Sequence record: ON529851.1
Length of the DNA: 64,000 nucleotides
Direction: 5' to 3' (one strand)
Numbering within the stretch: the first letter of the stretch is position 1; every line of letters starts with the position of its first letter. The notes beneath the pieces were generated by a model. It was not told where the DNA came from, did no database searches, and was given only the letters and a program-made list of their open reading frames with translations. The position numbers and the translations under genes were made by a program. Shown here one piece after another: positions 3,980 to 55,867 of this stretch.

Positions 3980-4419
3980 TAGACCTCGCGTGGCGGCTGC
4001 TGGCCCGGCAGGGGTTCCAGCGCCGTGGTGATGGCGTCGACCGCCTCCCCGACCTGAGACAGGCCCGCGTAGGGCATGCCGTGCAGGTCCATCAGCTTGG
4101 CGAGCGCGACGATGCGCTCGGTGATGATGAACTGGAGGTGGCGGGCGACGGGCGGATTCAGGTCGCGCGACTTGTTGAGGTAACGCGTGACCTGGGATTT
4201 GGAGCAGCCGATCGCCTTGGCGATGTCGGCCTGCCAGTGATCCCCGTTGAGCGTGGAGCCGATCAGCCGGAAGTCCTCCGGGCTCAGAATTGGCGGCGCG
4301 GGGGCCACGGCAGGCGCCTTAGCAGGGCGAGCGCCCGCTGCTCGCGCAGGCCGTCCAGGGGACTTGGCGGCGGCAGGCGCACGGCGGGCGGGGGGCGTAA
4401 GGGTGGGGGCGTCCGGCAT
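3979..4419 (-). CDS. HTH DNA-binding protein with Ala/Pro-rich N-terminus
   Basis: QADIAKAIGCSKSQVTRYLN helix-turn-helix. Confidence 0.7.
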   Translation of the reverse strand: MPDAPTLTPPARRAPAAAKSPGRPARAAGARPAKAPAVAPAPPILSPEDFRLIGSTLNGDHWQADIAKAIGCSKSQVTRYLNKSRDLNPPVARHLQFIITERIVALAKLMDLHGMPYAGLSQVGEAVDAITTALEPLPGQQPPREV

Positions 4420-26844: not shown

Positions 26845-26931
26845 TGGAGGTGCGACCTGGACTCGAACCAGGATGAGGGTTTCCCCTACGGCTTATGAGG
26901 CCGCTGCCTATTCCAGCCGCGCCACCGCACC
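26845..26931 (-). tRNA. tRNA with CAU anticodon (Met or Ile2), long variable arm, U73
   Basis: acceptor GGTGCGG/TCGCACC-T-CCA; anticodon arm GCGGC-CTCATAA-GCCGT; V-arm AGGG-GAAA-CCCT; T arm CCTGG-TTCGAGT-CCAGG. Confidence 0.9.
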
Positions 26932-26942
26932 AAAAAGAAGTC

Positions 26943-27021
26943 CAGGCGTGCTCCCGTTACACTAAACCGGCGAGGGTCATGACCCTCGGGCGCCGGCTGC
27001 GGGGTTGAACCGCTCTGCCTG
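26943..27021 (-). ncRNA. circularly permuted tRNA mimic (YrlA-like module)
   Basis: order CAGGC, T arm GCGG-TTCAACC-CCGC, AGCCGGCG, palindromic hairpin GAGGGTCATGACCCTC, CGCCGGTT, TA, D arm GTGT-AACGGGA-GCAC, GCCTG. Confidence 0.75.
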
Positions 27022-27161
27022 TGTTTCCGCCGCTGCGCCATGCGAGCGCTGGCCGCTAAGCCAACGCCTGAGGGCTCGAACCCCGGCGACGAAGATTCGG
27101 ACCAGCCCGTCGGCCGGTCCACGAACGCCGCTGCGCCGAGGGAGGCGCCGAGGCGATCGAA

Positions 27162-27239
27162 TGGGAGCGGGGACACGATTCGAACGTGCGATCTCTTGGT
27201 TATGAGCCAAGAATGTTGACCGGGCTACACTACCCCGCG
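27162..27239 (-). tRNA. tRNA-Met(CAU), initiator-like
   Basis: CGCGGGG/CCCCGCT (C1xU72 mismatch), CTTGG-CTCATAA-CCAAG, GCACG-TTCGAAT-CGTGT, encoded CCA. Confidence 0.9.
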
Positions 27240-27250
27240 ACTCTTAGGCG

Positions 27251-27620
27251 CCAGTTCCGACGGCAGTGCGCCGGCTGGTACTCAACGGACTCCTCCGCCG
27301 ACCCTGCGCCAGGAACCATGGCGGACGCAGGATCAAGACGAAGGCGTTGCTTTACACCCACCTTGGACGTCGGACCCGTCGGGCCGACGAAACTTTGACC
27401 AGGGGTTATGGGACGAGTAATCCCGCCCTCTGGCCCGGCGGACTACTAGGCCTGCCCTTGCCTGGGCTCCCCCAGACGTCCGGCACGACTTTTGGTCAAC
27501 CAACCTTTACTCACGAAGACGGACGTAGCACCCGGCGTGGATCGGAACTGGTAGGCCCCTCTCCTGAACGGGCCGCCGTGCTCTGGCGGTGGTCCGTCGT
27601 CATCGCCGCCGGCGTCCGCC
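27251..27620 (-). ncRNA. candidate structured ncRNA between tmRNA and tRNA-Met
   Basis: no credible ORF; 10-bp closing helix 27542-27551/27251-27260; flanked by RNA genes. Confidence 0.4.
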
Positions 27621-27629
27621 TGCGAGAGT

Positions 27630-27971
27630 AAAGTGGGGAACTTTCTGTTCCAAGGCCCGGCAAGCCGGGGTTCCCCATACCCGTGGTCGCCCTTAGGCGG
27701 CCAGGAGGACTCGTTCGCCAGCGGCGAAGTTGTCGTTGTGTGCTTCGACAGTTGTCAAAGTTGGATCGTGAGCAGCCCGAAGACCACCATGCAGACCCTA
27801 GCACTCGCCATTCAATCCCGTCACCAACGTCAATCGATACTGTTCGGCCCCTCAAACCGCGCCCGTCTCCCATTATAGGAGGGGGATTGGTGGAGCCGAC
27901 GGGATTCGCACCCGTGTCTTGCCCGTCTGTTTCGTTCTCTCTGCTTCGGTCCGGAGACCTCCGCGCGACGA
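27630..27971 (-). ncRNA. ssrA: two-piece (circularly permuted) tmRNA, alphaproteobacterial type
   Basis: acceptor piece ends GACACGGGTGCGAATCCCGTCGGCTCCACCA (CCA 27888-27890); 36-nt spacer; coding piece starts GGGGCCG at 27851 (G3:U70, A73); tag frame 27743-27693 AHNDNFAAGERVLLAA*. Confidence 0.93.
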
Positions 27972-27977
27972 AATGCC

Positions 27978-28018
27978 TGTATACAGAGTCCGTTTCTGAG
28001 TGTCAAGCATTACGTCAA
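27978..28018 (-). promoter_or_regulatory. tmRNA promoter
   Basis: TTGACGTAATGC-TTGACA-17 nt-TATACA. Confidence 0.75.
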
Positions 28019-28026
28019 AGATTTTT

Positions 28027-28113
28027 TGGAGGGACGGGTGAGAATCGAACTCACGCCAGGCTTTCGCCAGGAGGATTTGCAGTCCCCCGCCTTACCACTC
28101 AGTCCACCGTCCC
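28027..28113 (-). tRNA. tRNA-Cys(GCA) with long variable arm
   Basis: GGGACGG/CCGTCCC-T-CCA (U73); GGGGA-CTGCAAA-TCCTC; ~16-nt extra arm CTGGCGAAAGCCTGG; GTGAG-TTCGATT-CTCAC. Confidence 0.9.
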
Positions 28114-28119
28114 CTGGTG

Positions 28120-28314
28120 TCGTTCTGGAGAGGGGAGCCCGCCCGTATCCGCCGCAGGTCCCGTGGTCGGTCCCGGCGGCGTCAGGGTTTCACGGCCCCA
28201 GGTCGACCCTCTCCCGTGATAGAGGGCGATACGCTGCGGACGGGCTCGCCTCTCCAGACGAGAAGGACCGCCCTGTTGCACTCCCCGGAGGGATCGTGTG
28301 GCGGCCCGTGACCC
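28120..28314 (-). ncRNA. candidate rod-shaped ncRNA upstream of tRNA-Cys
   Basis: promoter TTGCGG-17-TATAAG (28347-28319); stems TCTGGAGAGG/CCTCTCCAGA, GAGCCCG/CGGGCTC, CGTATC/GATACG. Confidence 0.55.
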
Positions 28315-28493
28315 TCGTCTTATAGCAGTGACGCCCCGTCCCCGCAACCGGAAAATGCCGACTATGTCTAAAATCCCGACACTTCCCGTTCAATTTGACA
28401 AGAAAATAGAGGATTGAACTTTATGTTAAGTCGTGCTACGCTCTTCGAGCGGCCGACATCAGTGCGCCGCGTCCTGCCAACGGAGACAACCAA

Positions 28494-29231
28494 ATGCTAC
28501 ACAGTGTTCATGGCGCCGTTCCCAAGCTTAAGCGCTGGTGCGGACCTTCCGCCATTTCCATCATTACCGGGCAGCCCTATCACCATGCTCTGGCGTTGCT
28601 CAAAGACGTCAAGGCGTCCAGGCGTACTTACCGCATCACGAAGGAGCCCGTCATCAAGGGCGCCTCGTCGCCAAGCGTGCGCACCGTCCTGAAGGACCTG
28701 GGCTACCGGACGACGCGGCGGGTGACGCCCTCAGGCGTCACCGTCGCGGCCTGGCTGGCGTCCCGACGACCCGACGACCTGTTCACGACCTTCCTGATCG
28801 TGGCGGCCAATCACTGGATGGTGGTGCGCGGCGACGAAGCCTGCTGCGGCATCCTCGGGACGCCGACGCCGGTCGAGCGCATGAAGTTCCGGCGCGGCGT
28901 CGTCACCGAGTGCTGGGTGGTTGAGGCGTCCGCGCAGGGCGTGGCGCCGATCGTCACCGAGGTGCGGGCCAAGCCGAGGGCGGCGGCGTCCGCCTGGGAC
29001 CGGCGTGAAGCGCGCGACCGCCGCGCTTTCGCCAAGCTGGCGCGCCAGCAGGGGTTCACCTACAAGATCGTGCGCGACTGCGACACGATCCGCTACATGG
29101 AAATCGACGCCTGCGGCCCGTTCCCCCAAGGGCTCGCCACCCTGCACCACGACTGGGCGGAGACCCTGGACCGGGTCCGGCACTGTCTGGAGCATCCCGA
29201 GGACGCCGCCGAGGGCAGCTACGGCCGCTGA
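28494..29231 (+). CDS. hypothetical protein, possible papain/C39-like Cys-His fold
   Basis: GGAG RBS; WCGPSAIS...NHWMVV; own promoter TTGAAC-17-TACGCT. Confidence 0.65.
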   Translation: MLHSVHGAVPKLKRWCGPSAISIITGQPYHHALALLKDVKASRRTYRITKEPVIKGASSPSVRTVLKDLGYRTTRRVTPSGVTVAAWLASRRPDDLFTTFLIVAANHWMVVRGDEACCGILGTPTPVERMKFRRGVVTECWVVEASAQGVAPIVTEVRAKPRAAASAWDRREARDRRAFAKLARQQGFTYKIVRDCDTIRYMEIDACGPFPQGLATLHHDWAETLDRVRHCLEHPEDAAEGSYGR

Positions 29232-29238
29232 ATGCAAG

Positions 29239-29270
29239 AGCCCCGACCGAGCGATCGGTCGGGGCTTTTT
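29239..29270. terminator. bidirectional intrinsic terminator
   Basis: AGCCCCGACCGA/TCGGTCGGGGCT stem then TTTT. Confidence 0.9.
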
Positions 29271-29279
29271 CTCGCCGTC

Positions 29280-29455
29280 GTCTGTTTCTCGGCCGGCGCA
29301 GCGTCAGGAGGGTGTGTCGCGAGACCTCCGTCACGGCTCCAGGGCGCTGGGTCCCCTGAAGCAATCCTCACCTGAACCGGGCTTTCCTCCCCAAGGGGCT
29401 GAAGGTGGCGGCGTCCAGGCGACCCTGCGGGGCTCACACGGCAAGGTCGCTTCTT
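29280..29455 (-). ncRNA. candidate ncRNA unit U4
   Basis: non-coding, hairpin-rich; shares CGTGACGG and an ACGCCG loop with U1-U3. Confidence 0.35.
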
Positions 29456-29529
29456 AATGCCAGGCATAGAAGTCGACAGGAGAAAGGGTTTTCCTATTCT
29501 CCAGCATTGGCGTGGTCCGATGTCGATGT

Positions 29530-29730
29530 AGCACAGCCTCTGGCTGCCGTCACGCCTGGTTCCCATTTCTAGGACGGCGTTCTCCTCAGAAGACGGGTCC
29601 GGGTAGACCTCGTGCGGCTCTTCAGCGCCTGACGGAACTCGACGACGTGGTTGCCGGCCGTCTGAACTGGCGTCCCCAAGCGCTCCCAGGGGCATGCCGT
29701 AGGAGTGTGGCAGGGTCCGCCCCACGCTGT
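29530..29730 (-). ncRNA. candidate ncRNA unit U3
   Basis: promoter TTGACT-17-GTATAT; 3' pseudoknot motif GGA-GAACGCCG-TCC...AGGCGTGAC. Confidence 0.6.
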
Positions 29731-29764
29731 GTCAGGATATACGACAATGAAGAGGGGGAAGTCA

Positions 29765-29995
29765 ACACCGCCTCTGGCGGCCGTCACGCCTGGTCGTTCG
29801 TCTCGGGCGGCGTTCCCGTCAGGCCTGATTGTCCCCGGCCGAGGTTTGTTCGGGGGAGCGGTGCGGTCAATCACCCCGACTCACGTTCTCTCGTAACCCG
29901 GCAGTACGGGCTTAAGCGCGCACGAGCGCTGCAAGGCAGTCACGCGGTGGTCCGCCTGTGGTGGGGCTTCAAATCCAGTCGCGCAATCCCCGCCT
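29765..29995 (-). ncRNA. candidate ncRNA unit U2
   Basis: promoter-like TTGACC-17-CATATA; same 3' motif; 27/29 identity with U3 3' end. Confidence 0.6.
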
Positions 29996-30029
29996 ATATG
30001 TCAGGATTGTCGTCAACGGTCAAGATGGT

Positions 30030-30240
30030 AAAGGGCGCTCTCTCCCGGTCACGCCTTGTCCTGATGTCTCAGCCGGCGTTCGCTTCAGACAGTACGGCAT
30101 TCTCGGGGCCGTCCCACTCACCCGCTGTCGTCGGGCCTGTTCCCAGAGGAAGGTCTACCCCAGGACAGATTGCTCCGGAGGCCAGGTCAGGGGCAAACCC
30201 TGTGTGCTGCGCCTAAGGACCTTCAGCAAGCGGAGAGCCT
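30030..30240 (-). ncRNA. candidate ncRNA unit U1
   Basis: begins after rsr terminator; AGC-GAACGCCG-GCT...AGGCGTGAC; CTCTCC/GGAGAG end pairing. Confidence 0.55.
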
Positions 30241-30262
30241 ATCAGGATCAGGGCGAGAGGGC

Positions 30263-30298
30263 AAAGAAAAACGGCCCTGATCTTCAGATCAGGGCCGC
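30263..30298 (-). terminator. terminator of the Y RNA-rsr operon
   Basis: CGGCCCTGATC-TGAA-GATCAGGGCCG then TTTTTCTTT. Confidence 0.9.
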
Positions 30299-30354
30299 AT
30301 CAAACTTACGTTGTAGCGTAATTCCGCACGCGGATTACGAATACCCGTGCCGGA

Positions 30355-31740
30355 TCAGCCGACGACGTTTCCGTCCGAGAAGTCCATCGCTTCGACTTCC
30401 CGGATATAGCGCAGGACGCTCTCCGAGAAGCCGTCGATGTGGACCCACCCGTTGCCGTACCCGACACCATTCTGGTGGCTGGCGACGTTGATCATATAGG
30501 CCTTGTCGGCCTTGGGCGCCGGCAGTCGTCCGCCGCCCATGCCACTGCTCAGGGCGCCGTTCGCCTGTTCGTCAGTGATGACGATCAGTCGGTCGCAGGC
30601 GAACTGGCGGTTCACCACGTCCACGGCCTGGGCCAGGGCGGTGCCGCTGTGCGGCTGCGAACGGATCACCGCCTCGACCCCCGCCATGCCCTTGCGGGCC
30701 GGCACTTCCACGAGGCCGTTGGAGAAGGTCACGACGCGCACGTCGCCCGGCAGGATCGACGCCAGCGTCGCCGCCGCGTCCATCCGGGTCAGGTCCGACT
30801 TTCCGGACAGCTTGTTCCGCATGGAATAGGAGACGTCGACCATGACCACGGTCGATCCCGTGAAGGGTTCGGCCTGGTTGATCGAGGCCACCAGGGCGTC
30901 GTCCAGCGCCCGCTCGAACGAGGGCGCATAGCGCGCCGCCGCCGTGAAGCGGAAGGGCAGGACGCGATCCGCGCCCTTGCGCGCCCGGATCGCGGCGTTG
31001 ACCAGATCGCGATCGACGCCGGCCTGCTCCATGTTGCGCAGGTTGCGCAGCAGGGCGAGGTAGCCCAGCTTGCCGTCGGTCAGCAGACGCGTGAACGTCG
31101 CCTTCTTGTCCGCGCCGCCCGACAGGGCGACTTCCCAGGTGTCGGGCGCCGCCAGTTCGTTGTCGACCAGCTTCTTGTAGAGGGTCTCGCGGTCATCGTT
31201 CGCCGGCTTGGCGTGCGCCAGGAACAGGACGTCGCGCAGACGCACCGACTTGGCCCGATCGTATTTGGCGATCTGGTAGGCGTCGAAGTTGCCGAAGGCC
31301 ATCGACAGGCCCTTCTTCACCTGGGCCGACAACGGCGCCTTCTTGCCGTTCGAGCGCAGCGGGTTCAGCGCCCAGTAGAGGGCCAGGAACTCGCTCAGTT
31401 CGTCAGCGCGCTGAATGACGCGCGCGATGGTGAGCGACACCAGGGCCGAACCTGAGCCGCGCTGGGCCAGCACGACGAGCAGCAGAAGGGGAACGTGACG
31501 CAGCTTGGCGTCCTCGCGGGCCTCGACGGCGATCTGGGCGAGGGTCTCGACCGGAACCTCCTTGGCGAGGCTCTGGATACGGTCGGCGATCGACACGCCG
31601 CTCTCGTAGAAATTGTCTTCCCAGAGCAGGCAGGACATGACCGACCGGCGCAGGGCCTGCGTCTTGGTCATCCGATCGGCCGGCGCGCCTTCATGAGTTC
31701 GCGCGGTGGTCGCTTTGGGCTTTGCGTTGATCGACGCCAT
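30355..31740 (-). CDS. rsr: Ro60/Rsr-like TROVE + vWA RNA-binding protein
   Basis: THEGAPA, LRRSVMSCLLWEDNFYESG, KYDR..VRLRDVLFLAH, TWEVALS, LLRNLRNM, VLPFRF; vWA DVSYSM, GT, ITDEQ; AGGAGG RBS. Confidence 0.93.
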   Translation of the reverse strand: MASINAKPKATTARTHEGAPADRMTKTQALRRSVMSCLLWEDNFYESGVSIADRIQSLAKEVPVETLAQIAVEAREDAKLRHVPLLLLVVLAQRGSGSALVSLTIARVIQRADELSEFLALYWALNPLRSNGKKAPLSAQVKKGLSMAFGNFDAYQIAKYDRAKSVRLRDVLFLAHAKPANDDRETLYKKLVDNELAAPDTWEVALSGGADKKATFTRLLTDGKLGYLALLRNLRNMEQAGVDRDLVNAAIRARKGADRVLPFRFTAAARYAPSFERALDDALVASINQAEPFTGSTVVMVDVSYSMRNKLSGKSDLTRMDAAATLASILPGDVRVVTFSNGLVEVPARKGMAGVEAVIRSQPHSGTALAQAVDVVNRQFACDRLIVITDEQANGALSSGMGGGRLPAPKADKAYMINVASHQNGVGYGNGWVHIDGFSESVLRYIREVEAMDFSDGNVVG

Positions 31741-31782: not shown

Positions 31783-31937
31783 GGTTGGGGAGGAAAAGTC
31801 GAAAACCCTTTCATACCGGTGCGTCTACCGTTTCCGCCACCCGCGCATTGTGGCGCGCGAGCCAGGACTTGAACCTGGAAGCCCTTGACGGGCGCCGGTT
31901 CCAGACGAAGTATGGGCTCTCTGCGCCATCCCCGACC
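31783..31937 (-). ncRNA. Y-RNA-like element D: permuted class II (Leu-like) tRNA mimic with internal GCCA
   Basis: ACCGG, V-arm GCCC-GTCAA-GGGC, T arm CCAGG-TTCAAGT-CCTGG, CTCGCGC-GCCA-CAAT-GCGCGGG, TG, D arm GCG-GAAACGGTAGA-CGC, CCGGT; outer stem GGTCGGGGA/TCCCCAACC. Confidence 0.85.
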
Positions 31938-31957
31938 TCGCGGTCAGTGAACTCTCC

Positions 31958-32095
31958 GGCGCTCTGGTAGGAAGGCGGGGGAACATACGCAGCCGGATAG
32001 CGGGATCGAACCGCGAGACCGGGGGTTTGAATCCCGGCTTATCAACCAGCGATGTAACCGACCGCTTTCACCACCCGCCCACCAACCAGGGCGCC
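31958..32095 (-). ncRNA. Y-RNA-like element C: non-permuted degenerate tRNA-like core (UCA loop) in a long closing stem
   Basis: outer GGCGC-CTGGT/ACCAG-GCGCC and GGCGGG/CCCGCC; GGTGGTGAAAG motif; T arm GCGG-TTCGATC-CCGC; loop ATTCAAA. Confidence 0.7.
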
Positions 32096-32108
32096 GGAAA
32101 AGCAGAAA

Positions 32109-32259
32109 CATGAAGGCGGTGGGGGAATAAGCGACCCCACTCTTTTTTAGGCGTGCTACCGTTACACCAAACGCCGCTAGGCGACGTTGCGGAATCGAAC
32201 CGCTCATCCCGCTCCACATGCGATGAAAGTGACGTCTGTCGCCACCCACCGCCTTCATG
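32109..32259 (-). ncRNA. Y-RNA-like element B: permuted tRNA mimic
   Basis: 15-bp perfect outer stem CATGAAGGCGGTGGG; T arm GCGG-TTCGATT-CCGC; AACGTCGC-CTA-GCGGCGTT; D arm GTGT-AACGGTA-GCAC. Confidence 0.85.
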
Positions 32260-32269
32260 CTGTTGGTCC

Positions 32270-32445
32270 AGAAGCGTATGGTGGATCGACAGGGGAACCG
32301 GCGGAAAGGCGCCGTTTGGACTATCGTTCTAACCAACTGAACTACCGCCGCGCCCGAGGGTGCGCCGGGTGGGACTCGAACCCACGACCTACAGTGTGCG
32401 AAGAATGCCTCTCCTTCACCACCTGTCGACCCGCCATACGCTTCT
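32270..32445 (-). ncRNA. Y-RNA-like element A: permuted tRNA mimic with bulged helix
   Basis: 12-bp outer stem AGAAGCGTATGG; GTCGACAGG/CCTGTCGAT; GGTGG[T]GAAGG/CCTTTCCGCC; ACTGT-AGGTC-T arm GTGGG-TTCGAGT-CCCAC; D arm GTTC-AGTTGGTTA-GAAC; ATAGT. Confidence 0.88.
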
Positions 32446-32464
32446 CGACCCTGTCCGCGACAGT

Positions 32465-32580
32465 CCCGAGGACTGACCCCGCAGAGAACCGGAGTTCCCT
32501 TGCGGGGTCAAGTCGTCCGGGAATAGGCGGAACCGAGAGCGGGGCCAAGGCCCCAACGTACCAAAAACGAAGAACTCGGT
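32465..32580 (-). ncRNA. 5' leader hairpins of the Y RNA array
   Basis: TGACCCCGCA/TGCGGGGTCA 10-bp stem; ACCGAG/CTCGGT enclosing GGGGCC/GGCCCC. Confidence 0.4.
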
Positions 32581-32625
32581 CCCTGTCGCCACGGACAATG
32601 ACTGTGTGCCCGATCCCGTTCATTG

Positions 32626-32643
32626 TGTCAACAACGACGACAG
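32626..32643 (-). promoter_or_regulatory. -35 element with CGT box upstream of Y RNA array
   Basis: CTGTCGTCGTTG-TTGACA; -10 not clear. Confidence 0.5.
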
Positions 32644-32663
32644 AAAAAGTTGGGATTTGCGGC

Positions 32664-32696
32664 AAAAAGAAACCCCCGGATCGCTCCGGGGGTTTC
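32664..32696 (-). terminator. terminator after repressor gene
   Basis: GAAACCCCCGGA/TCCGGGGGTTTC stem then TTTTT. Confidence 0.85.
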
Positions 32697-32728
32697 CACG
32701 ACGTCTGACGTCGGCGGGGGTTCCAGGG

Positions 32729-55313: not shown

Positions 55314-55867
55314 TCAGCAGGCCGTTTTGATGAAGGGGATGCGCGGTCGGAGCGCTTGCGGCCTTCTTGGTCTCACGATTAACCACGAACGTCAAGATTT
55401 ACGTCAATGGGAGTCAGTTACACTGGCACACTTGCGCCGGGGCCGCCCTTGGTCTATTCGGTGGGCTTCGAGAAGACGACGAGGATCGTCGAGCGTCTCC
55501 TGGCCGCGCATGGGTCAGGATCAACGCCGTCGTCTCAGGGAGACGCGGACCTAAGGCGATAGGGCTCCGCGTCAATGGGTGAAGTGAGGAACGGACGGCG
55601 CATCCGTGTTGGAGCCATAGTCCAGGTGGGCGATTCACTGCCTTACCCGGTCCGAGTCGCGGTGATCGAATACCGCCGCGTGACGTGACGCCGACCGACA
55701 GTAGAGGATGGCGTGACCTAAGGGGAGAGGCCCATGCAGGGCGGACCGCGTCGGACGCGGCCGCCGACTAGCCGGAGGGGCTGCACACCCGATGGACAGG
55801 ATCGCCCCGCCCGCGAAGAAGCGAATGGGGGATGACGCCGGCGCGGCCGACACAGACGACGCGCACG

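What the first reader, a model, noticed from the sequence alone, without database searches (positions are those of the whole stretch)
29530..30240. Three tandem ~230-nt paralogous ncRNA units sharing a 3' H-type pseudoknot, downstream of rsr
Seen: about 1 kb without a credible ORF. The loop (G)AACGCCG (30074-80, 29808-14, 29575-81) is closed by different stems (AGC/GCT, GGG/CCC, GGA/TCC). An invariant AGGCGTGAC follows 17-18 nt later, and its GGCGT can pair with the loop ACGCC. U2 and U3 share 27/29 nt at the 3' end, and the two differences are compensatory (CGCC-AGA-GGCG vs AGCC-AGA-GGCT). U2 and U3 have TTGAC-17 promoter-like sites. Inference: a family of individually transcribed structured RNAs I cannot assign to a known class, possibly further Rsr clients or exonuclease-resistant RNAs.
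Basis: seen in the sequence. Interest (0 to 1): 0.8.

Follow-up and report, generated by a model that had tools for sequence, protein, structure and literature searches.

The report
Widespread phage pseudoknot-hairpin RNA motif
The three repeats downstream of the phage's Ro60 (rsr) gene are small non-coding RNA genes, each ending in a ~55-nt pseudoknot-plus-hairpin module that recurs almost letter for letter in well over a hundred phages and prophages of at least six bacterial phyla and matches no described RNA family; its function is unknown.

Summary
The window is Brevundimonas jumbo phage vB_BpoS-Marchewka. Only the 3' ~60 nt of the three units are homologous; their 140-170-nt bodies are unrelated. 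The region is non-coding but more conserved than synonymous sites, and each unit has a conserved -35/-10-like pair.

The shared module is not local. It has a 2-3-bp stem closing the loop GAACGCCG, a 5-bp loop-to-AGGCGUGAC pseudoknot, then GAC-purine and a hairpin with an AGAG-type loop. A pattern scan found it in over 120 viral contigs, and a covariance model confirmed it in 33 bacterial genomes. A model built only from metagenomic copies recovers all three window units. The pseudoknot covaries (ACGCC/GGCGU, ACACC/GGUGU, ACGAC/GUCGU, ACGUC/GACGU).

Rfam 15 has no match, and it is not YrlA, HDV-like or pistol. Copies sit just after stop codons (capsid, RecT genes), 0-10 nt from tRNA ends, after tmRNA, and in tight arrays. 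rsr is nearby only in the Brevundimonas phages.

My best guess at function, inferred only, is a 3'-end-marking, exonuclease-blocking module. A new self-cleaving ribozyme, or a decoy/aptamer, remains a live alternative.

The parts
30271..30298 (-). Intrinsic terminator of rsr: a 12-bp hairpin followed by a U-tract. It separates rsr from unit 1.
30236..30264 (-). Promoter-like site of unit 1 (TTGCCC, 17 nt, TAGGCT).
   Evidence: Read from the sequence. Both hexamers are conserved and the spacer varies in five related phages. It does not pass the strict sigma-70 scan.
30033..30232 (-). Unit 1 RNA; the ends are approximate. It has a unique body of about 145 nt plus the 3' module.
   Evidence: 92% of columns are identical in five phages, against 80% at rsr third codon positions. 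The body is unrelated to those of U2 and U3.
30033..30085 (-). Module copy 1: stem AGC/GCU; loop GAACGCCG 30081-30074; pseudoknot ACGCC 30079-30075 with GGCGU 30055-30051; GAC; hairpin 30046-30033 with an AGAGAG-type loop.
   Evidence: Model R1 scores 25.1 bits, E 7.5e-5; sequence read.
29995..30023 (-). Promoter-like site of unit 2 (TTGACC, 17 nt, CATATA).
29766..29990 (-). Unit 2 RNA; the ends are approximate. It has a unique body of about 170 nt plus the 3' module.
   Evidence: Sub-windows 29917-29798 have 95-100% identical columns in five phages.
29766..29819 (-). Module copy 2: loop 29815-29808; pseudoknot 29813-29809 with 29790-29786; box 29791-29783; hairpin 29781-29767 (GCCGCC-AGA-GGCGGU, with a G.U pair).
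   Evidence: Model R1 scores 27.6 bits, E 1.8e-5.
29736..29765 (-). Promoter-like site of unit 3 (TTGACU, 18 nt, UAUAUC). It starts 2 nt after the hairpin of copy 2.
29532..29730 (-). Unit 3 RNA; the ends are approximate. It has a unique body of about 145 nt plus the 3' module.
   Evidence: 94% identical columns in five phages and no indels.
29533..29586 (-). Module copy 3: stem GGA/UCC (GGG/UCC, i.e. a G.U pair, in Kabachok); loop 29582-29575; pseudoknot 29580-29576 with 29556-29552; box 29557-29549; hairpin 29547-29533 (GCAGCC-AGA-GGCUGU).
   Evidence: Model R1 scores 20.6 bits, E 1e-3.
29272..29531 (-). A 260-nt stretch after unit 3 that carries no module copy. It is moderately conserved; what it is remains unknown.
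   Evidence: 47 of 260 columns are substituted, which is more variable than the units.
29239..29272 (.). GC-rich hairpin with a U-tract on the plus strand. It terminates the convergent ORF 28494-29231 and bounds the RNA cluster.

Best explanation
**Shown.** Window 29532-30232 (minus strand) holds three small non-coding RNA genes of Brevundimonas phage Marchewka.
- Each has its own conserved -35/-10-like pair.
- Each has a unique body of about 145-170 nt that is under purifying selection.
- Each ends in one copy of a ~55-nt module.

The module consists of:
- a 2-3-bp stem closing the 8-nt loop G-A-ACGCC-G;
- an A-rich linker of variable length;
- the box A-GGCGU-GAC, whose GGCGU pairs with the loop ACGCC to form an H-type pseudoknot;
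- one purine;
- a 4-7-bp hairpin with an AGAG-containing loop.

**Inferred.** The module acts in cis as a 3'-end cassette. It sits where transcripts or processed RNAs end:
- just after stop codons of highly expressed genes;
- directly against tRNA and tmRNA ends, where RNase P or 3' processing would cut;
- immediately before the next promoter.

Its compact pseudoknot stacked next to a GC-rich hairpin would stall 3'-to-5' exoribonucleases. The upstream RNA (an mRNA, or here a ~200-nt sRNA) would therefore accumulate. In Marchewka this would give three stable sRNAs with different bodies and a common protected 3' end. The near-invariant unpaired residues (GA..G, A, GAC-R, the AGAG loop) would make the tertiary contacts that lock the fold.
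For: **Family and structure**
- It gave 76 hits in bacterial genomes. Model R1 confirms 33 of them at E<0.001, from Pseudomonadota, Myxococcota, Verrucomicrobiota, Planctomycetota, Acidobacteriota and Chloroflexota.
- R1, built without any Dolichocephalovirinae sequence, recovers U1-U3.
- In 93 distinct copies 98.3% of cells are paired, against 81% in shuffles and 25-45% when partners are slid.
- All 5 hairpin pairs covary. Two of the 5 pseudoknot pairs show double changes and none is ever unpaired.
- The variant copies with ACGUC/GACGU, ACGAC/GUCGU and ACACC/GGUGU were found by searching on the hairpin alone.
- The strand is set by 19 G.U against 3 A.C cells in the hairpin.
- The short closing stem is 88-89% paired, with six pair types.

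**Position at 3' ends**
- 27 of 93 distinct copies follow a same-strand open frame of at least 100 codons within 60 nt. In 17 of these the gap is 6-17 nt.
- The upstream genes include three unrelated major-capsid families and a RecT-like protein.
- tRNAs start 3-10 nt after the module or end 0-4 nt before it.
- In L151 a tmRNA ends 48 nt upstream.
- In the window, Gurke, Colossus and the L032 clade, a TTGAC -35-like box starts 2-11 nt after the hairpin.
- In the L032 and L045 clade a pistol ribozyme lies 53 nt downstream of the second module copy in L032, and 124-174 nt downstream of the first copies. It would create a 3' end there.

**Window units**
- They are non-coding.
- They are more conserved than synonymous sites.
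Against: - No expression or end-mapping data exist, so all functional steps are inference.
- Whole-unit minimum free energies are no better than shuffles (z +1.1, +0.8, -0.8). The pseudoknot is not modelled in these folds.
- The window copies have no U-tract.
- The U-rich enrichment after the module (28 of 93, against 8.7 expected) starts 3-5 nt away from the hairpin. It may simply reflect AU-rich start regions of the next gene.
- Most copies lie between co-directional genes, and 19 of 100 loci carry arrays with only 3-29 nt between copies. That is more than a simple 3' cap needs.
- Conservation of about 20 unpaired nucleotides across six phyla is more typical of a catalytic or ligand- or protein-binding core than of a mere roadblock.
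Confidence: 0.35

Rival explanations
1. The module is a new class of small self-cleaving ribozyme. It would cut at or next to its own boundary, releasing tRNAs, separating cistrons and trimming the three sRNAs to unit length.
For: - Its genomic niche is that of phage self-cleaving ribozymes. It lies 0-10 nt from tRNA ends, as reported for theta ribozymes (PMC10879173).
- It is intercistronic in phage operons.
- It occurs in tandem arrays.
- In one clade it sits next to pistol ribozymes.
- It is about 50 nt, pseudoknotted, and has about 20 near-invariant unpaired nucleotides.
Against: - It matches no Rfam ribozyme model even at E<=5-10.
- Its topology does not fit HDV-like ribozymes. The linker can be only 10 nt, there is no P1 partner, and no conserved C follows the hairpin.
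- Known ribozymes were found near it in only one clade. None turned up in the other 39 loci scanned.
- No candidate cleavage site can be named.
Confidence: 0.22
2. The module is a binding unit (decoy, sponge or aptamer) for a universally conserved host factor or small molecule. Candidates include an exoribonuclease, RNA polymerase, the ribosome or a nucleotide signal. Placing it in highly expressed transcripts and in arrays would raise its copy number. The sRNA bodies would be separate cargo.
For: - Loop and junction residues are identical across hosts from six phyla. This argues for a universal partner or a self-contained pocket.
- In arrays with 3-29-nt spacing, neighbouring copies use different pseudoknot sequences, as would be expected to keep multivalent units folding independently.
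- Copies sit in capsid mRNAs and in tRNA and tmRNA clusters, which are the most abundant phage RNAs.
Against: - No partner has been identified.
- No protein gene co-occurs with the module across clades.
- The tight spacing to stop codons and tRNA ends is not explained by this reading.
Confidence: 0.2
3. The three units are additional Y-RNA-like clients or regulators of the phage Rsr (Ro60).
For: They lie directly downstream of rsr on the same strand in the Marchewka group and in Gurke.
Against: - Rsr is absent from the flanks of all other module loci.
- In CcrColossus rsr is about 24 kb away, and there the units abut tRNA-Cys.
- The units have no YrlA model hit, no 5' GNCGAAN0-1G motif and no T- or D-arm.
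- The phage has a YrlA-like RNA upstream of rsr.
Confidence: 0.06
4. The conserved boxes are DNA sites, such as an operator or activator site upstream of each TTGAC promoter, and not RNA structure.
For: - AACGCC and GGCGTG form an imperfect inverted repeat.
- In the window the box lies about 25-35 bp upstream of the next -35-like hexamer.
Against: - Compensatory changes keep the pairing, not the sequence.
- The hairpin has 19 G.U against 3 A.C cells.
- Only 7 of 93 copies are followed by TTGAC.
- Several copies are followed within 3-10 nt by a tRNA gene, with no room for a promoter.
Confidence: 0.03

Closest known systems
Bacterial and phage Y RNAs (YrlA, Rfam RF02553; Chen et al. 2014, PMC4201824)
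   Same: Small non-coding RNAs encoded next to rsr on the same strand, sometimes several per locus. CcrColossus and other phages are reported to carry them (PMC12135203).
   Different: - No model hit.
- No GNCGAAN0-1G motif near the 5' end.
- No tRNA-like T and D arms.
- The family is found overwhelmingly without rsr.
- The real YrlA-like RNA of this phage is on the other side of rsr.
Theta (minimal HDV-like) ribozymes of phages (PMC10879173)
   Same: Small pseudoknotted phage RNAs lying within a few nucleotides of tRNA genes.
   Different: - The module lacks the nested double pseudoknot.
- It has no P1.
- It has no conserved cytosine after the hairpin.
- It also occurs upstream of tRNAs and after protein genes.
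- No Rfam HDV-type hit.
Pistol ribozyme (Rfam RF02679)
   Same: About 50 nt, with the same broad topology: a hairpin loop pairs with a strand further 3'. Genuine pistols lie next to the module in the L032 and L045 clade.
   Different: The conserved residues differ, and the pistol model does not score the module. The pistol hits are separate elements lying 53-174 nt downstream of the module copies.
3'-end stabilisers and exonuclease-resistant structures (intercistronic REP hairpins, RNase III-processed hairpins after T7 gene 10, viral xrRNAs). This comparison is recalled from general knowledge and was not tested here.
   Same: Structured elements placed right after highly expressed genes. They are thought to stop exonucleases and to set differential mRNA stability.
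   Different: Those elements are either simple hairpins without conserved sequence or, in the case of xrRNAs, block a 5'-to-3' enzyme. None shares this sequence or fold.

Membership tests
YrlA / bacterial Y RNA | Match to the Rfam YrlA covariance model (gathering score 69 bits) | tested here: not met
   No YrlA hit in 28100-30400 even at E<=10. By contrast, 32301-32413 upstream of rsr scores 32.6 bits, E 6e-5.
YrlA / bacterial Y RNA | GNCGAAN0-1G motif near the 5' end, and tRNA-like T and D stem-loops (PMC4201824) | tested here: not met
   No such motif in the 5' parts. The single match is GACGAACG at position 194 of U2, inside the module linker. There is no GTTCRA T-loop, and ARAGORN finds no tRNA-like gene there.
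YrlA / bacterial Y RNA | Encoded within about 4 kb of a Ro60 ortholog on the same strand | tested here: inconclusive
   Met in the window and in its Brevundimonas relatives. Not met for the module family at large: 1 of 309 loci, and Colossus rsr is 24 kb away.
YrlA / bacterial Y RNA | Binding to Rsr | not testable with these tools
   Needs immunoprecipitation or EMSA.
HDV-like / theta ribozyme | Nested double pseudoknot with P1 formed by the 5' end, and a catalytic C at the start of J4/2 | tested here: not met
   - The linker between the short stem and the box can be only 10 nt and has no upstream complement in the copies I inspected.
- The residue after the hairpin is A in 67% of copies, and no conserved C follows.
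- No Rfam HDV-type hit.
HDV-like / theta ribozyme | Self-cleavage | not testable with these tools
   Needs in vitro transcription assays.
Pistol ribozyme | Match to Rfam RF02679 | tested here: not met
   The module itself is never scored. Separate pistols are scored at L032 2308-2374 and L045 1577-1649.
Intrinsic (Rho-independent) terminator | GC-rich hairpin immediately followed by a U-tract | tested here: inconclusive
   The hairpin is present. None of the three window copies has a U-tract. Across the family, 28 of 93 copies are U-rich within 14 nt against 8.7 expected, but the tract is offset by 3-5 nt and may be confounded by start regions of downstream genes.
Pseudoknot-hairpin module defined in this report | A 2-3-bp stem closing an 8-nt loop; a 5-bp loop-to-box pseudoknot; GAC plus a purine; a hairpin with an AGAG-containing loop; model R1 E<0.001 | tested here: met
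   U1, U2 and U3 have all elements and score 25.1, 27.6 and 20.6 bits with a model built from unrelated metagenomic copies. U2 and U3 carry the longer-stem AGA-triloop variant, which is also seen in Gurke, Colossus, L072 and L150.
Type III antitoxin RNA arrays (ToxI-like) | Near-identical short direct repeats next to an endoribonuclease toxin gene | tested here: not met
   The units are 230-265 nt apart and share only the module. No toxin-like neighbour appears in the annotation. An abiF RNA next to the module was seen in one locus only.
UG27 reverse-transcriptase template RNA arrays (bioRxiv 10.64898/2026.09.22.753630) | AUCN7UANAG and UUYA motifs bracketing a central hairpin | tested here: not met
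   No AUCN7UANAG on either strand of 29232-30354. Presence of an RT gene elsewhere in the phage was not tested.

The most novel reading that the evidence does not exclude
The module is a new class of natural functional RNA with an activity of its own. It would be either a small self-cleaving ribozyme that processes phage tRNA, tmRNA, sRNA and capsid-gene transcripts, or an aptamer or decoy for a universally conserved host factor or signalling nucleotide. Phages from at least six bacterial phyla would be using it.
Probability: 0.4. Interest if true: 0.9.

Novelty: categorically new. Interest (0 to 1): 0.75.

Why it matters
New, widespread and highly conserved RNA folds are now rare finds. This one is short, abundant and phage-borne. 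About 20 of its unpaired residues are conserved from alphaproteobacterial jumbo phages to prophages of Planctomycetota and Chloroflexota.

- If it is a ribozyme or aptamer, it adds a new natural class and a compact part for RNA engineering.
- If it is a 3'-end protection cassette, it would explain how phages boost capsid mRNAs and stable RNAs. It would also offer a portable RNA-stabilising tag.

Either way it gives an annotation for an unannotated 1.1-kb gap in a group of jumbo phages and for hundreds of intergenic regions elsewhere. Caveat: the novelty rests on a negative Rfam 15 result and negative full-text searches. A description in closed literature or in supplementary lists cannot be excluded.

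Tried and rejected
- **Protein coding.** Rejected.
- **Rfam.** Searched at gathering score and at permissive E-values on the window and on 46 related loci. No family covers the module.
- **Whole-unit folding.** Not informative, with z near 0.
- **Strict sigma-70 scan.** I kept them as 'promoter-like' on the strength of their conservation pattern only.
- **First pattern scan (loop plus box only).** It returned mostly chance matches in coding DNA. Adding the AGAG hairpin loop fixed this, but it biases the collected set towards AGAG loops.
- **HDV-like mapping, a k-turn reading of CUGA...GA around the short stem, and a hammerhead-core reading.** All tried by eye and dropped, because other family members lack these features.
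- **A long helix enclosing the short stem.** It can be drawn for U1, U3 and Gurke but not for U2 or Colossus, so I do not claim it.
- **Pairing with 16S rRNA or the anti-Shine-Dalgarno sequence.** Considered for the GGUGUGAC box and the GGAG-containing loop but not tested. The box covaries with its own loop, which makes an external partner unnecessary.
- **Full-text searches.** Searches for the conserved strings and for descriptions of such a motif found nothing relevant.
- **Chen et al. 2014 supplementary table.** The table listing the CcrColossus Y RNA is not held.
- **UG27 template arrays.** Checked and excluded by their motifs.
Full report
**Identity of the window.** The region is 100% identical to Brevundimonas phage vB_BpoS-Marchewka (ON529851.1, 348 kb, Dolichocephalovirinae). 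Window 29200-30400 corresponds to record 277200-278400. The 1.1 kb between a hypothetical ORF (window 28494-29231, plus strand) and the 'RNA-binding protein' gene (30355-31740, minus strand) is unannotated. That gene has TROVE and vWA domains, so it is an Rsr/Ro60 ortholog. The neighbourhood is an RNA island. It holds two tRNA-Met genes, a permuted tmRNA and tRNA-Cys on the minus strand, an Rnl-type RNA ligase, and a YrlA-like RNA upstream of rsr.

**Checking the observation.**
- GAACGCCG lies at 30081-30074, 29815-29808 and 29582-29575, closed by different short stems.
- AGGCGUGAC follows 16-17 nt later.
- A hairpin comes next. U2 and U3 differ in it by one compensatory pair (C-G to A-U).
- TTGAC-type -35 boxes with a -10-like hexamer 17-18 nt further on precede U2 and U3. 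A weaker pair, TTGCCC-17-TAGGCT, precedes U1.

The strict sigma-70 scan does not call these sites. In the alignment with Bambus, Kabachok, Domovoi and Papperlapapp, however, the hexamers are invariant and the spacers between them are the most variable stretches of the region. That is the pattern expected of promoters.

The long plus-strand ORF is an artefact of 62% G+C. It is broken in three relatives and has no Pfam match. Substitutions are spread evenly over the three codon phases, and single-base indels separate close relatives.

The units are under constraint. Between 90 and 94% of their columns are identical in all five phages. The comparison values are 80% and 62% at third codon positions of the flanking genes and about 65% in the inter-unit spacers.

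One part of the title does not hold. The bodies of U1-U3 are not detectably similar to each other (z -0.9 to 0.7); only the last ~63 nt are (z 7.6-13.4).

**The shared 3' part is a member of a very large family.**
- BLAST showed that a 54-nt piece of U2 also matches CcrColossus. Three copies lie there between a methylase gene and tRNA-Cys, with no rsr nearby.
- The same pattern gave 76 hits in representative bacterial genomes.
- I built covariance model R1 from 20 metagenomic copies, modelling the pseudoknot and the hairpin as helices.
- R1 finds 128 copies in 100 viral loci at E<0.01.
- R1 confirms 33 of the bacterial hits at E<0.001. They come from alpha-, beta- and gammaproteobacteria, Myxococcota, Verrucomicrobiota, Planctomycetota, Acidobacteriota and Chloroflexota. 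The unconfirmed bacterial hits include the Streptomyces and other actinobacterial ones, several of which lack the hairpin.
- R1 recovers U1-U3 as the three best hits of the 64-kb window.

**Structure.**
- The hairpin is proven by covariation. All five pairs change on both sides, with up to six pair types per position.
- The short stem around the loop is only 2-3 bp, but it is 88-89% paired with six pair types.
- The pseudoknot is invariant in the canonical copies, which on its own proves nothing. I therefore searched on the hairpin alone for copies with a different box. These carry exactly the matching change in the homologous loop:

| Loop | Box | Where found |
|---|---|---|
| GAACGUCG | AGACGUGAC | L032, L164 |
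| GAACGACG | AGUCGUGAC | L153, L161 |
| GACACCUG | UGGUGUGAC | many loci |

- In the model-based alignment, 2 of the 5 pseudoknot pairs show double changes and no cell is unpaired. That alignment is fitted to the structure, so these numbers lean its way. The compensatory variants are independent of it.
- The near-invariant unpaired residues are G-A before and G after the loop strand, an A before the box, GAC plus a purine after it, the purine-rich hairpin loop (GAGAGA in most copies; AGA within CCAGAGG in the Dolichocephalovirinae variant), and usually an A after the hairpin. The AGAG loop was part of my search pattern, so its invariance is partly built in.

**What it is not.**
- Rfam 15 has no match to the module at permissive thresholds, in the window or in 46 related loci.
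- It lacks the YrlA hallmarks.
- It cannot adopt the HDV-like fold.
- It is not scored by the pistol model.
- It lacks the UG27 template-RNA motifs.
- Full-text searches for its conserved strings or for a description found nothing.

**Context across the family.**
- The module is co-oriented with the conserved upstream gene in every clade I examined.
- In 27 of 93 distinct copies, a same-strand open frame of at least 100 codons ends within 60 nt. In 17 of these the gap is 6-17 nt.
- Identified upstream genes include major capsid proteins of three unrelated families (SU10-type, PHROG 1005, Mu gpT), a RecT-like annealing protein, and a DUF1599-like protein.
- Where tRNA genes are near, the spacing is strikingly tight. 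The tRNA starts 3-10 nt after the module or ends 0-4 nt before it.
- In L151 the module follows a tmRNA by 48 nt.
- 19 of 100 loci hold two to four copies, with gaps as short as 3-29 nt. Neighbours in such arrays tend to use different pseudoknot sequences.
- In one clade (L032, L045), pistol ribozymes lie 53-174 nt downstream of the module copies. No other known ribozyme was seen near the module in the other 39 loci scanned.
- Rsr is found in the flanks of only one other locus, that of Gurke. Colossus rsr is about 24 kb from its units. The adjacency to rsr in Marchewka is therefore lineage-specific. In Colossus and CcrPW (L158) the units run straight into tRNA-Cys and the tmRNA. In Marchewka an ORF on the other strand separates them.

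**How it most likely works.**

Shown:
- three separately promoted, constrained, non-coding units;
- a shared pseudoknot-hairpin module at their 3' ends;
- family-wide placement at the ends of genes and stable RNAs.

Inferred: the module is a cis-acting 3'-end cassette that stalls 3'-to-5' exonucleases after termination or processing, so that the upstream RNA accumulates. The processing could be RNase P at a following tRNA, a following ribozyme, or inefficient termination at the hairpin.

I hold this at about 0.35 for three reasons.
- There are no end-mapping data.
- Tight arrays and intercistronic positions are not required by the model.
- Such strong conservation of unpaired residues is more typical of a catalytic or binding core.

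The rivals are:

| Rival | Confidence | Main reason |
|---|---|---|
| New self-cleaving ribozyme | about 0.22 | Same niche as theta, pistol and hammerhead ribozymes |
| Decoy or aptamer for a universal factor or ligand | about 0.20 | Identical core across six phyla; multivalent arrays |
| Rsr client | about 0.06 | Adjacent to rsr only in one lineage |
| DNA operator | about 0.03 | Contradicted by covariation and the G.U bias |

**Novelty and verdict.** The Rsr link is probably incidental. What it does needs experiments.

Noticed in passing
window 31800-32700 (-), esp. 32301-32413: Upstream of rsr there is a YrlA-like RNA. It scores 32.6 bits on Rfam YrlA (E 6e-5, below the gathering score) and has clear T- and D-arm sequences. 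Two further weak tRNA-like hits lie at 32180-32253 and 31991-32063, and another T-arm-like GGTTCAAGTCC lies near 31870-31885. These are probably the phage's real Y RNA cluster. In Gurke the equivalent spot is annotated 'tRNA-Ser'.
   Followed up: partly
window 55682-55736 (+): A weak fourth copy of the module (R1 14.2 bits, E 0.038). It has loop GUGACGCCG, box UGGCGUGAC and a GGG-GAGAGG-CCC hairpin. It lies in a 1.2-kb unannotated gap between a DNA methylase gene and the spanin genes.
   Followed up: partly
window 26845-28113 (-): A permuted (two-piece type) tmRNA lies at 27693-27950. It is flanked by unusually long 'tRNA-Met' (87 nt) and 'tRNA-Cys' (87 nt) calls. The 240 nt upstream of tRNA-Cys (28114-28350) are GC-rich and unannotated.
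   Followed up: no
window 29272-29531 (-): The 260 nt after unit 3 are non-coding and moderately conserved in the five related phages. They carry no module copy. They may be a fourth RNA or a 3' extension of U3.
   Followed up: no
L032 2308-2374 (+); L045 1577-1649 (-): Bona fide pistol ribozymes (56.9 and 44.2 bits) lie a short distance downstream of module copies in one clade of viral contigs. There the order is ORF, module, module, pistol.
   Followed up: partly
L157 7784-8146 (-); L195 2279-2676 (+); L237 11273-11616 (-); L128 8552-8818 (+): Arrays of three to five module copies in 300-400 nt. Adjacent copies use different pseudoknot sequences (ACGCC/GGCGU, ACACC/GGUGU, and an ACGCAC/GUGGCGU type). 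Some linkers carry 30-60-nt inserts. Many canonical copies are preceded by a hairpin with a GACG loop (GGGACGCC), which contains a second ACGCC.
   Followed up: partly
L146 1713-1754 (-): An abiF RNA motif (Rfam RF03085, 42.7 bits) lies 12 nt downstream of a module copy. Another lies elsewhere in L141. This could be coincidence or a link to abortive-infection RNA biology.
   Followed up: no
L006 (Gurke) about 4230-4260 (-): Gurke has, upstream of its canonical copy, a diverged copy with box AGGCUUGAC and hairpin GGUCGCC-AGA-GGCGGC. The family in these jumbo phages is therefore larger than exact-pattern counts suggest.
   Followed up: no
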